From NCBI RefSeq assembly GCF_006345805.1, contig NC_043011.1:55440464-55504463 (forward strand): a stretch of 64,000 bases of DNA. The letters run 5' to 3'. This document shows, in pieces, positions 41,495 to 41,562 of the stretch (its first letter is position 1; each line of letters begins with the position of its first letter). A program made the position numbers and the translations under genes. The stretch comes from Octopus sinensis (Eukaryota). Below the pieces are notes generated by a model that was given only the letters and a program-made list of their open reading frames with translations, made no database searches and was not told where the DNA came from.

Positions 41495-41562
41495 GGTGCA
41501 AAGGATTCTGGGACATTGGTGTTTCGCTACCTTCTGTCTCATCAGCCAGAAGAACCTGCACC
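41495..41562 (-). ncRNA. Type I hammerhead ribozyme with intact catalytic core
   Basis: Minus strand GGTGCAG-GTTC-TTCTGG CTGATGA GACAGAAGGTAGC GAAAC ACCAAT GTC|CCAGAA-TCCT-TTGCACC; stem I 6+7 bp, stem III 3 bp with CCAA loop, weak stem II; predicted cleavage 41512/41511. Confidence 0.75.

What the first reader, a model, noticed from the sequence alone, without database searches (positions are those of the whole stretch)
41495..41562. Sense-strand hammerhead ribozyme inside the knottin gene intron
Seen: on the minus strand (the host gene's transcribed strand) every core residue is present (CUGAUGA, GAAA, A15.1-U16.1, GUC cleavage triplet). Stem I is bipartite (UUCUGG/CCAGAA, internal loop, GGUGCAG/UUGCACC) and stem III is 3 bp with a CCAA loop. 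Stem II (GACAGAAGGUAGC) looks like GCUAC-AGAAG-GUAGC missing 2 nt, so activity may be attenuated. Established: minimal type I hammerheads occur in Penelope-like elements and retrozymes, and some intronic ones are conserved. Inference: either a Penelope relic or a tuned co-transcriptional cleavage site about 1 kb after the donor that could limit or alter knottin pre-mRNA output.
Basis: partly seen in the sequence, partly recalled or inferred. Interest (0 to 1): 0.75.

Follow-up and report, generated by a model that had tools for sequence, protein, structure and literature searches.

The report
Broken hammerhead ribozyme relic in intron
A 68-base stretch in an octopus gene's intron carries nearly all the parts of a self-cutting hammerhead RNA, but one of its three helices is broken, so it is most likely a dead leftover of a mobile element and not a regulator of the gene.

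Summary
On the minus strand at 41562..41495 there is a complete hammerhead core: CUGAUGA, GAAA, A15.1-U16.1 and a GUC triplet, with cleavage predicted between 41512 and 41511. Helix I is bipartite (6 bp, a 4x4 internal loop, then 7-8 bp). Helix III is 3 bp with a CCAA loop. The motif lies in sense orientation, about 1 kb into the 3.7-kb intron of a two-exon cysteine-rich secreted-protein gene.

None of 1500 simulated windows matched this combination. Helix II is effectively absent: G10.1-C11.1 plus one isolated A-U. The best Rfam match is Hammerhead_HH9 at 22.8 bits against a gathering score of 52. That match appears only in a local scan. A score this low is expected about four times by chance in an octopus-sized genome.

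Thermodynamic folding gives the hammerhead fold no weight: helix III probability is 0.001, and a rival GACA/UGUC helix covering the cleavage site has 0.98. There is no second copy, no tandem repeat, no Penelope coding relic and no rod-like flank.

Conservation and copy number could not be tested, because no cephalopod genomic DNA was reachable with these tools.

Most likely this is a solo, decayed copy of a canonical metazoan type I hammerhead with little or no activity. The tuned-cleavage idea is unsupported.

The parts
41495..41562 (-). Whole hammerhead-like motif, type I topology (helix I open)
   Evidence: Sequence read. It is the only descriptor hit in the window on either strand. Local Rfam hit to Hammerhead_HH9 at 41563..41488, 22.8 bits.
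41556..41562 (-). Distal helix I, 5' strand GGUGCAG; pairs with 41495-41501
   Evidence: The pairs are formed in the MFE structure of the 68-mer.
41495..41501 (-). Distal helix I, 3' strand UUGCACC
41546..41551 (-). Proximal helix I, 5' strand UUCUGG; pairs with CCAGAA at 41506-41511. The internal loop GUUC (41552-41555) lies above it.
   Evidence: Pair probabilities are 0.85-0.99.
41506..41511 (-). Proximal helix I, 3' strand CCAGAA, starting at C1.1 (41511). The internal-loop strand UCCU (41502-41505) follows.
41539..41545 (-). Core C3-A9, CUGAUGA
   Evidence: Matches the HH9 consensus.
41526..41538 (-). Helix II region GACAGAAGGUAGC. Only G10.1-C11.1 and an isolated A-U can pair, so the helix is defective.
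   Evidence: adding any helix II pairing makes the hammerhead fold less stable (-10.0 or -9.9 against -12.4 kcal/mol). P(G10.1-C11.1) is 0.0. The HH9 model skips this segment.
41513..41525 (-). G12 A13 A14, then helix III (A15.1-C-A / U-G-U16.1) with loop CCAA
   Evidence: The predicted pair probability is only 0.001, because UGUC pairs with GACA of the helix II region instead.
41511..41512 (-). Predicted scissile bond: C17 (41512) | C1.1 (41511), after the GUC triplet
   Evidence: Position follows from standard hammerhead numbering applied. Cleavage itself was not tested.
42535..42598 (-). Host gene exon 1 coding part (signal peptide, 21 codons + 1 nt), with donor G|GTAAGT
   Evidence: tblastn of O. 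bimaculoides P0001.
38808..42534 (-). Intron of 3,727 nt that holds the motif in sense orientation
38437..38807 (-). Host gene exon 2 coding part (cysteine-rich mature region plus a hydrophobic tail and the stop codon)
   Evidence: No Pfam family matched.
41700..42033 (-). tRNA-derived SINE with an A-tail, flanked by the 11-bp target-site duplication ATTTATTCTTA (42044-42034 and 41699-41689). It is a separate insertion upstream of the motif.
   Evidence: read directly.
41183..41353 (.). Copy of an abundant SINE-like repeat just downstream of the motif. Together with the SINE above, it bounds the ~330-nt unique segment that carries the motif.
   Evidence: (inverted-repeat pairs I3-I5 with 46843-46984).

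Best explanation
This is a solo, decayed copy of a canonical metazoan type I hammerhead ribozyme. That is the kind carried by non-LTR retrozymes, satellite repeats and related retroelements, and the kind from which the amniote intronic HH9 is thought to derive.

It sits by accident in sense orientation in the intron of an octopus cysteine-rich secreted-protein gene. The catalytic core, the bipartite helix I and the short helix III survive. Helix II does not: it was lost either through a 2-nt deletion from a 5-bp stem or through two substitutions in a 4-bp stem.

Without helix II, the RNA is predicted to pair GACA of the former helix II with UGUC at the cleavage site. While still nascent, it is predicted to pair the purine tract CAGAAG with the 5' strand of helix I. 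The active three-way junction is therefore rarely if ever formed, self-cleavage is absent or very slow, and the intron is spliced normally.

Shown: the anatomy, the strand, the intron position, the excess over chance, the lack of helix II and the predicted misfolding. Inferred: the retroelement origin, the loss of activity and neutrality for the host gene.
For: - **Anatomy:** the core and helices I and III are exactly as in natural type I hammerheads.
- **Closest family:** the best Rfam family is HH9, with the same 6-bp helix, internal loop and distal helix layout.
- **Chance:** 0 of 1500 simulated windows matched the helix I plus core plus helix III combination.
- **Helix II:** it is unpaired, and the hammerhead fold scores -9.9 to -12.4 against an MFE of -21.8 kcal/mol.
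- **Ensemble:** P(helix III) is 0.001 and P(rival GACA/UGUC helix) is 0.98. Nascent prefixes fold into a -8.6 kcal/mol hairpin that encloses CUGAUGA. Restoring two bases in helix II brings the hammerhead fold to -20.0 against an MFE of -21.8.
- **Isolation:** it is the only copy in the window and no similar flank exists. The surrounding intron is a patchwork of SINE insertions.
- **Literature:**
  - Canonical metazoan hammerheads have helix I of 6 bp, helix II of 4 bp and a short helix III (PMC4209133).
  - A cephalopod genome, the giant squid, has 235 Rfam Hammerhead_1 loci as well as Penelope elements (PMC6962438).
  - Retrozyme monomers are dispersed, with about 43% overlapping introns in Xenopus, though they are depleted there relative to intergenic DNA (bioRxiv 10.64898/2026.07.22.740005). 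That depletion fits survival of disabled sense copies.
Against: - No paralogous or orthologous copy could be retrieved, so the retroelement origin and the intact-helix-II ancestor are inferred, not shown.
- All 13 helix I pairs, 3 helix III pairs and 15 core positions are intact while helix II alone is hit. A single deletion explains this easily. Two independent substitutions explain it less easily (about 1-2% if mutations fall at random).
- Natural hammerheads with 1-2 bp helix II exist and are fast when a pseudoknot holds helices I and II together (PMC3088659), so lack of helix II does not prove inactivity.
- Nearest-neighbour folding ignores the non-canonical core and tertiary contacts, and I ran no positive-control hammerhead through the same calculation.
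Confidence: 0.62

Rival explanations
1. A relic that still self-cleaves measurably but has no host function. The motif is retroelement-derived as above. A non-canonical helix II (G-C, A.G, C.A, A-U with a GAAGG loop), or a loop II to helix I internal-loop pseudoknot (GAAGG with CCUUU), lets a fraction of transcripts cut slowly. This would have no selected effect on the gene.
For: In the symmetric register, the helix II region has the canonical 4-pair length, with two Watson-Crick pairs flanking two mismatches. A 5-bp pairing between GAAGG (41534-41530) and CCUUU (41504-41500) is possible at -4.2 kcal/mol. Hammerheads with helix II of one or two pairs are active when a pseudoknot is present (PMC3088659). 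From my own knowledge, engineered 'minizymes' lacking helix II keep low activity.
Against: The pseudoknot complementarity is no better than chance (p = 0.45 with shuffled loops, 0.07 with random 11-mers). A much stronger competitor pairing exists between the same purine tract and the 5' strand of helix I (-8.7 kcal/mol). The ensemble gives the hammerhead helices a probability of about 0.
Confidence: 0.15
2. A chance look-alike. The sequence never was a ribozyme. A CUGAUGA...GAAA pair happens to lie inside an ordinary imperfect hairpin in AT-rich intron DNA.
For: The covariance-model score is far below threshold (22.8 against 52 bits) and the site is not reported in the whole-window scan. Rescaling the E-value (0.0027 for 922 nt x 4227 families) gives about 4 such HH9 hits by chance per 2.7-Gb genome, counting both strands. 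Helix II, the feature a chance hit would lack, is indeed lacking. The MFE z-score is only -1.7. No second copy was found anywhere.
Against: For one 64-kb window the expectation is about 1e-4 or about 9e-5 per hammerhead family (rescaled). Features not demanded by the descriptor also match natural hammerheads: U7, G10.1/C11.1, C15.2-G16.2, the GUC triplet, and a 6-bp proximal helix followed by a 4x4 loop, as in HH9. Cephalopod genomes hold hundreds of bona fide hammerheads (PMC6962438), so decayed real copies should outnumber chance hits.
Confidence: 0.13
3. A domesticated, attenuated intronic ribozyme. Slow or conditional self-cleavage about 1 kb into the intron competes with splicing, which needs the acceptor 2.7 kb further on. 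This would lower or gate output of the secreted-protein mRNA, as shown for the intronic CPEB3 ribozyme.
For: The motif is in sense orientation inside the only intron. All catalytic residues and helices I and III are intact while only the tunable peripheral helix is weakened. There is precedent in the amniote intronic HH9/HH10 (PMC6155905, PMC3088659). The CPEB3 ribozyme is a second precedent: its half-life matches polymerase transit to the next exon, and inhibiting it raises the mRNA (PMC10919898).
Against: There is no evidence of conservation, because none could be obtained. Predicted folding excludes the active fold. No significant tertiary contact was found. The site lies in a segment bracketed by young-looking SINE insertions with no other conserved-looking feature. 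Active sense-strand ribozymes in introns are expected to be selected against (depletion reported in bioRxiv 10.64898/2026.07.22.740005).
Confidence: 0.07

Closest known systems
Hammerhead_HH9 (Rfam RF02275), the intronic type I hammerhead of the amniote RECK gene
   Same: Type I topology, and sense strand of an intron. Helix I is a 6-bp proximal helix, a small internal loop and a closing distal helix. The core reads CUGAUGAG...CGAAAC. Helix III is 3 bp with a 4-5 nt loop, and the triplet is GUC. It is the best-scoring Rfam family here.
   Different: HH9 has a paired helix II with conserved loop nucleotides that contact the helix I loop. It is ultraconserved in birds and mammals and self-cleaves during transcription (PMC6155905, PMC3088659). 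Here helix II is unpaired, the loop nucleotides differ (GUUC/UCCU against UUAC/UAC), the score is 22.8 against the 52-bit threshold, and neither conservation nor activity is known.
Canonical type I hammerheads of metazoan non-LTR retrozymes and satellite repeats (Schistosoma Sm-alpha, newt satellite 2, mussel and coral retrozymes)
   Same: The same helix lengths and short helix III. Like the mussel motifs, it lacks the archetypal loop 1/loop 2 nucleotides (PMC7229834). The surrounding DNA is low in GC. The host phylum, Mollusca, is known to carry them.
   Different: Retrozymes are tandem repeats of about 170-400 bp whose monomers fold into highly self-paired circles. Here there is one copy, no tandem partner, and the 313-nt flank folds no better than shuffles (z = -1.39).
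Minimal hammerheads in the pseudo-LTRs of Penelope-like elements
   Same: Retroelement-borne type I hammerheads that are abundant in invertebrates. They have low activity as single motifs.
   Different: PLE min-HHRs have a long helix II (7-8 bp), a short helix I (4-5 bp) and essentially no helix III (PMC4209133), which is the opposite pattern to this site. No RT or GIY-YIG coding relic occurs in any frame of the intron.
CPEB3 ribozyme (HDV-like fold) in a mammalian intron
   Different: It has a different ribozyme fold, is conserved across mammals, and has measured kinetics and an in vivo effect. None of these is available here.
Natural hammerheads with a 1-2 bp helix II stabilised by a pseudoknot (Perreault et al. 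2011)
   Same: Only G10.1-C11.1 closes a large loop II.
   Different: Those depend on a clear Watson-Crick pseudoknot of 4 bp or more between loops (PMC3088659). Here the best candidate pairing is at chance level.

Membership tests
Hammerhead ribozyme (any type) | Conserved core: C3 U4 G5 A6 N7 G8 A9, G12 A13 A14, A15.1-U16.1, H17 | tested here: met
   CUGAUGA at 41545-41539, GAA at 41525-41523, A15.1 at 41522 with U16.1 at 41513, and C17 at 41512.
Hammerhead ribozyme (any type) | Helix I flanking the core and the cleavage site | tested here: met
   6 bp, a 4x4 loop, then 7-8 bp. Pair probabilities are 0.85-0.99.
Hammerhead ribozyme (any type) | Helix III closed by A15.1-U16.1 | tested here: inconclusive
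   Three complementary pairs with a CCAA loop exist. Their predicted ensemble probability is 0.001, because UGUC pairs with GACA instead.
Hammerhead ribozyme (any type) | Helix II: at least two stacked pairs starting at 10.1-11.1, or 1 bp plus a pseudoknot | tested here: not met
   Only G10.1-C11.1 and an isolated A-U can pair. Any helix II pairing costs energy. The Rfam model skips the segment. The pseudoknot is at chance level.
Hammerhead ribozyme (any type) | Score at or above the Rfam gathering threshold for a hammerhead model | tested here: not met
   No hammerhead appears at gathering thresholds. The best score is HH9 at 22.8 bits against 52. The site is absent from the whole-window permissive scan.
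Hammerhead ribozyme (any type) | Site-specific self-cleavage giving 2',3'-cyclic phosphate and 5'-OH ends | not testable with these tools
   This needs in vitro transcription or end mapping.
Metazoan non-LTR retrozyme | Tandem repeats of about 170-400 bp, each with a type I hammerhead | tested here: not met
   There is a single motif in 64 kb, and no similarity of the flanks to anything else in the window.
Metazoan non-LTR retrozyme | Monomer RNA that is highly self-paired (rod-like circle) | tested here: not met
   The 313-nt inter-SINE segment has z = -1.39, and helix I is not even formed in its MFE structure.
Penelope-like element pseudo-LTR | Min-HHR architecture (long helix II, short helix I, no helix III) next to an RT/GIY-YIG ORF | tested here: not met
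   The architecture is the opposite (against PMC4209133). Six-frame Pfam scans of the whole intron found nothing.
Conserved intronic ribozyme (HH9/HH10/CPEB3 type) | Sense strand of an intron of a protein-coding gene | tested here: met
   Exons were mapped with the O. bimaculoides orthologue, and the splice sites were read directly.
Conserved intronic ribozyme (HH9/HH10/CPEB3 type) | Conservation of the motif, with covariation, in orthologous introns | not testable with these tools
   No cephalopod genomic DNA was reachable. The orthologue is not on record, the paralogue contigs are spliced transcripts, ORF and neighbour-gene look-ups failed, and two metagenome scans were empty.

The most novel reading that the evidence does not exclude
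The motif is kept in the orthologous intron across octopods as a deliberately weakened or conditionally activated hammerhead. For example, helix II might be completed only by a bound factor, by the loop II to helix I pairing, or (pure speculation) by A-to-I editing of A11.3 (41528), which would turn the C10.3.A11.3 mismatch into a C-I pair. Its self-cleavage about 1 kb into the intron would then race against splicing and gate output of a secreted cysteine-rich peptide. That would be the first regulatory intronic hammerhead outside amniotes.
Probability: 0.04. Interest if true: 0.75.

Novelty: new member of a known kind. Interest (0 to 1): 0.2.

Why it matters
If it is what it most likely is, it matters little. 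Decayed copies of retroelement-borne hammerheads are expected by the hundreds in invertebrate genomes, and many lie in introns.

It is useful in three modest ways:
- **Calibration for motif scans.** A complete core with perfect helices I and III can still fail helix II, the covariance-model threshold and the folding test.
- **A small data point on cephalopods.** It suggests that canonical, HH9-like hammerheads, and not only Penelope-type ones, have been present in octopod genomes.
- **A cheap assay, if the minority reading is right.** A conserved, attenuated sense intronic ribozyme would extend the HH9/CPEB3 type of co-transcriptional control to molluscs, and a simple in vitro assay would test it.

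Tried and rejected
1. **Copies or orthologues via proteins.**
   - The 107-aa plus-strand ORF that overlaps the motif had no homologue in the 5.8-billion-protein set.
   - Its O. bimaculoides orthologue P0001 is not on record in any contig.
   - The 63% relative P0002 is found only on spliced transcriptome contigs without the intron.
2. **Neighbour-gene route.** The histone H3 gene 7 kb away is listed in 42,126 blocks of the collection. The 10 loci returned share only the H3 coding sequence with the window.
4. **Penelope origin.** Pfam scans of 10 intron ORFs and of all six frames of the intron (stops written as X) found no RT or GIY-YIG domain.
5. **Retrozyme origin.** There is no tandem copy and the flank is not rod-like.
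6. **Target-site duplications around the motif.** None were found.
7. **Pseudoknot rescue of helix II.** The complementarity is not above chance.
8. **Ribozyme-assisted snoRNA release.** The SNORD28-like hit 25 nt downstream has E = 3.6 at window level and lacks a D box, so I rejected the idea.
9. **tRNA scan of the region.** Nothing was found.
10. **Not done:** a positive-control fold of a known active hammerhead, because no verified sequence was at hand.

Full report
**What is there.** On the minus strand, 41562..41495 reads GGUGCAG-GUUC-UUCUGG-CUGAUGA-G-ACAGAAGGUAG-C-GAA-ACA-CCAA-UGU-C|CCAGAA-UCCU-UUGCACC.
- the CUGAUGA core (41545-41539);
- G12-A14 (41525-41523);
- A15.1-U16.1 (41522/41513);
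- a GUC triplet, with the scissile bond predicted between C17 (41512) and C1.1 (41511);
- a proximal helix I of 6 bp, a 4x4 internal loop and a distal helix of 7-8 bp;
- a 3-bp helix III capped by CCAA.

**Strand and gene context.** The host gene is real and lies on the minus strand. Exon 1 (ATG at 42598, ending at 42535) encodes a signal peptide and is followed by a consensus donor G|GTAAGT. Exon 2 starts after the AG at 38809-38808 and runs to the stop codon at 38437. The spliced 144-aa product is 94% identical over its full length to an Octopus bimaculoides protein (UniProt A0A0L8G3G9). It is 63% identical to a protein seen on cephalopod transcriptome contigs and 42% identical to a Mytilus protein. 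tblastn places the O. bimaculoides protein on exactly these two exons.

The protein is rich in cysteines with a knottin-like spacing but matches no Pfam family, so 'knottin' is an inference. The intron is 3,727 nt. The motif begins 972 nt into it, the cleavage site lies about 1.02 kb past the donor, and the acceptor is 2.7 kb further on. The window is therefore from an Octopus species close to, but not identical with, O. bimaculoides.

**Is it more than chance?**
- *Descriptor simulation.* I wrote a descriptor that deliberately ignores helix II: CUGANGA, 6-30 nt, GAAA, helix III of at least 3 bp closed by A-U, then U and a non-G base, then helix I. In the real window it hits only this site on either strand. 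In 1500 Markov-1 simulated windows (128 kb each, standing for both strands), the core plus helix III part occurred 1.28 times per window. With a proximal helix I of at least 6 bp the rate was 0.0053 per window. No simulated window added a distal helix of 7 bp or more, whereas the real site has 6+8. My extrapolated estimate is about 1e-4 per window.
- *Infernal E-value.* The local scan gives E = 0.0027 for 922 nt times 4227 families. This rescales to about 9e-5 per hammerhead family per window, but to about 4 per 2.7-Gb genome (genome size from my own knowledge).
- *Conclusion.* The motif is very unlikely to be chance in this window. A genome-wide scan would nevertheless throw up a few such sites by chance.
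- *Features outside the descriptor.* U7, G10.1/C11.1, C15.2-G16.2, GUC, and the 6-bp helix followed by an internal loop as in HH9 all match natural hammerheads.
- *Background expectation.* The giant squid genome has 235 Rfam Hammerhead_1 loci and Penelope elements (PMC6962438). Decayed real copies should therefore outnumber chance hits.

**Covariance models.**
- At curated thresholds the only Rfam hit in the window is a histone 3' stem-loop.
- A permissive scan of the whole window does not list the site.
- A permissive scan of 461 nt around it gives Hammerhead_HH9 (RF02275) at 41563..41488. The score is 22.8 bits against a gathering score of 52. Helices I and III and the core align, and helix II is skipped.

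**Folding.**
- The 68-mer's MFE structure (-21.8 kcal/mol, z = -1.7) keeps both parts of helix I. It replaces helices II and III with GACA (from helix II) paired to UGUC (the cleavage site), and GGU paired to ACC.
- The hammerhead secondary structure scores -12.4 kcal/mol without helix II, and -10.0 or -9.9 with the possible helix II pairs.
- In the ensemble, helix III pairs have probability 0.001, G10.1-C11.1 has 0.0, and the rival helix has 0.97-0.99.
- Nascent prefixes fold first into a 6-7 bp hairpin between the 5' strand of helix I (CUUCUG) and the purine tract CAGAAG of the helix II region, enclosing CUGAUGA (-8.6 kcal/mol).
The 'one deletion away' idea is therefore energetically sensible.
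- An equally simple alternative is two substitutions in a canonical 4-bp helix II: the register G-C, A.G, C.A, A-U with loop GAAGG.

These calculations ignore the non-canonical core and tertiary contacts, and I had no verified active hammerhead to use as a positive control.

**Could a pseudoknot rescue it?** Natural hammerheads with a helix II of one or two pairs are fast when a pseudoknot ties loop II to helix I (PMC3088659). Here GAAGG (41534-41530) could pair with CCUUU (41504-41500) at -4.2 kcal/mol. Shuffled loops do as well 45% of the time, and random 11-mers 7% of the time. This cannot be excluded, but it is not supported.

**What element did it come from?** Published descriptions (PMC4209133, PMC7229834, PMC6155905) give canonical metazoan type I hammerheads a helix I of 6 bp, a helix II of 4 bp and a short helix III. 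They sit in satellite or retrozyme tandem repeats, and the amniote intronic HH9 is very similar to them. Penelope-like elements carry a minimal form with a long helix II, a short helix I and no helix III. This site has the canonical layout, not the Penelope one.

No feature of a retrozyme beyond the motif itself is left:
- There is no second motif or tandem unit.
- The 313-nt flank folds like its shuffles (z = -1.39) and is not rod-like.
- No target-site duplication is visible around the motif.
- No Pfam domain occurs in the intron's ORFs or in any of its six frames.

The motif sits in a ~330-nt unique segment. On one side is a tRNA-derived SINE with an A-tail and an 11-bp target-site duplication (42033..41700). 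On the other is a copy of an abundant SINE-like repeat (41353..41183). A recent preprint argues that animal retrozymes derive from Penelope pseudo-LTRs. It also reports that dispersed monomers are common and that genic insertions are depleted (bioRxiv 10.64898/2026.07.22.740005).

**Mechanism.** If the fold formed, G12 would act as general base on the 2'-OH of C17 and the 2'-OH of G8 as general acid. The products would be a 2',3'-cyclic phosphate at 41512 and a 5'-OH at 41511 (established hammerhead chemistry, PMC6155905). Cutting the nascent intron could lower mRNA output only if it is fast compared with polymerase transit to the acceptor and with splicing. This has been shown for the intronic CPEB3 ribozyme (PMC10919898). 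With 2.7 kb to the acceptor, that time is of the order of a minute or a few (my estimate from typical Pol II rates). With helix II missing, a competing helix over the cleavage site and no significant tertiary contact, I expect no cleavage, or cleavage far too slow to matter.

**What could not be done.** Conservation, covariation and genome-wide copy number are the decisive tests. None was possible, because no cephalopod genomic sequence could be reached.

**Verdict.**

| Reading | Probability |
|---|---|
| Solo decayed copy of a canonical type I hammerhead, inactive or nearly so, neutral for the host gene | 0.62 |
| Same origin with residual but functionless cleavage | 0.15 |
| Chance look-alike | 0.13 |
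| Domesticated attenuated intronic ribozyme | 0.07 |

Interest is low (0.2). The feature is a new, degenerate instance of a known kind, and it does not meet the membership test for a functional hammerhead: helix II and the Rfam threshold both fail.

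Noticed in passing
window 6791-6882: A near-perfect palindrome with arms of about 45 bp. It scores on both strands against Rfam mir-9 (40.9 bits, gathering 58.6) and mir-BART10 (50.7, gathering 70). Each arm contains UCUUUGGUUAUCU, which by my recollection is the first 13 nt of miR-9-5p. A perfect palindrome looks more like a foldback or inverted duplication than a normal pre-miRNA.
   Followed up: partly
window 33722-34132 (+) and 34155-34199 (+): A lone intronless histone H3 gene (by my recollection identical to canonical H3.2) with a bona fide histone 3' stem-loop (Rfam 41.5 bits, above the gathering score of 34). 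It lies about 4 kb beyond the 3' end of the cysteine-rich gene, on the opposite strand, and is not part of a visible histone cluster.
   Followed up: partly
window 41383-41470 (-): A SNORD28-like C/D-box hit 25 nt downstream of the motif in the same intron, on the sense strand (26.8 bits, gathering 50; E = 3.6 at window level). A perfect C box AUGAUGA sits at 41478-41472, but there is no D box near a 3' terminal stem. I judged it to be noise.
   Followed up: partly
window 41700-42033 (-), TSDs 42034-42044 and 41689-41699: A tRNA-derived SINE with an A-tail and a clean 11-bp target-site duplication ATTTATTCTTA, inserted in sense orientation in the same intron. ARAGORN does not call its head as a tRNA.
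   Followed up: partly
window 43400-43781 and 44416-44800: A direct duplication with a period of about 1,017 nt (83-91% identity), made of SINE-like sequence. Inverted copies lie at 46725-47205.
   Followed up: no
window 38437-38807 and 42535-42598 (-): The host gene encodes a 144-aa protein: a signal peptide, two cysteine-rich modules and a hydrophobic C-terminal tail. It has no Pfam match, although UniProt names the O. bimaculoides orthologue 'Granulins domain-containing'. A 42%-identical relative exists in Mytilus coruscus, so the family is older than cephalopods.
   Followed up: partly
window 7005-7075, 16277-16347, 63574-63644 and others: Many sub-threshold mir-297, mir-466 and mir-3149 hits. 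The one I read, 7005-7075, is a (TA)n/(TG)n microsatellite and not a microRNA gene. I assume, without having read them, that the others are too.
   Followed up: partly
window 19207-19605 (-), 46354-46698 (-), 48441-48908 (-): ORFs that look, by eye, like transposon coding relics: a mariner-type transposase C-terminus, a non-LTR RT C-terminal fragment and an apurinic-type endonuclease. None looks Penelope-like. They were not run against Pfam.
   Followed up: no
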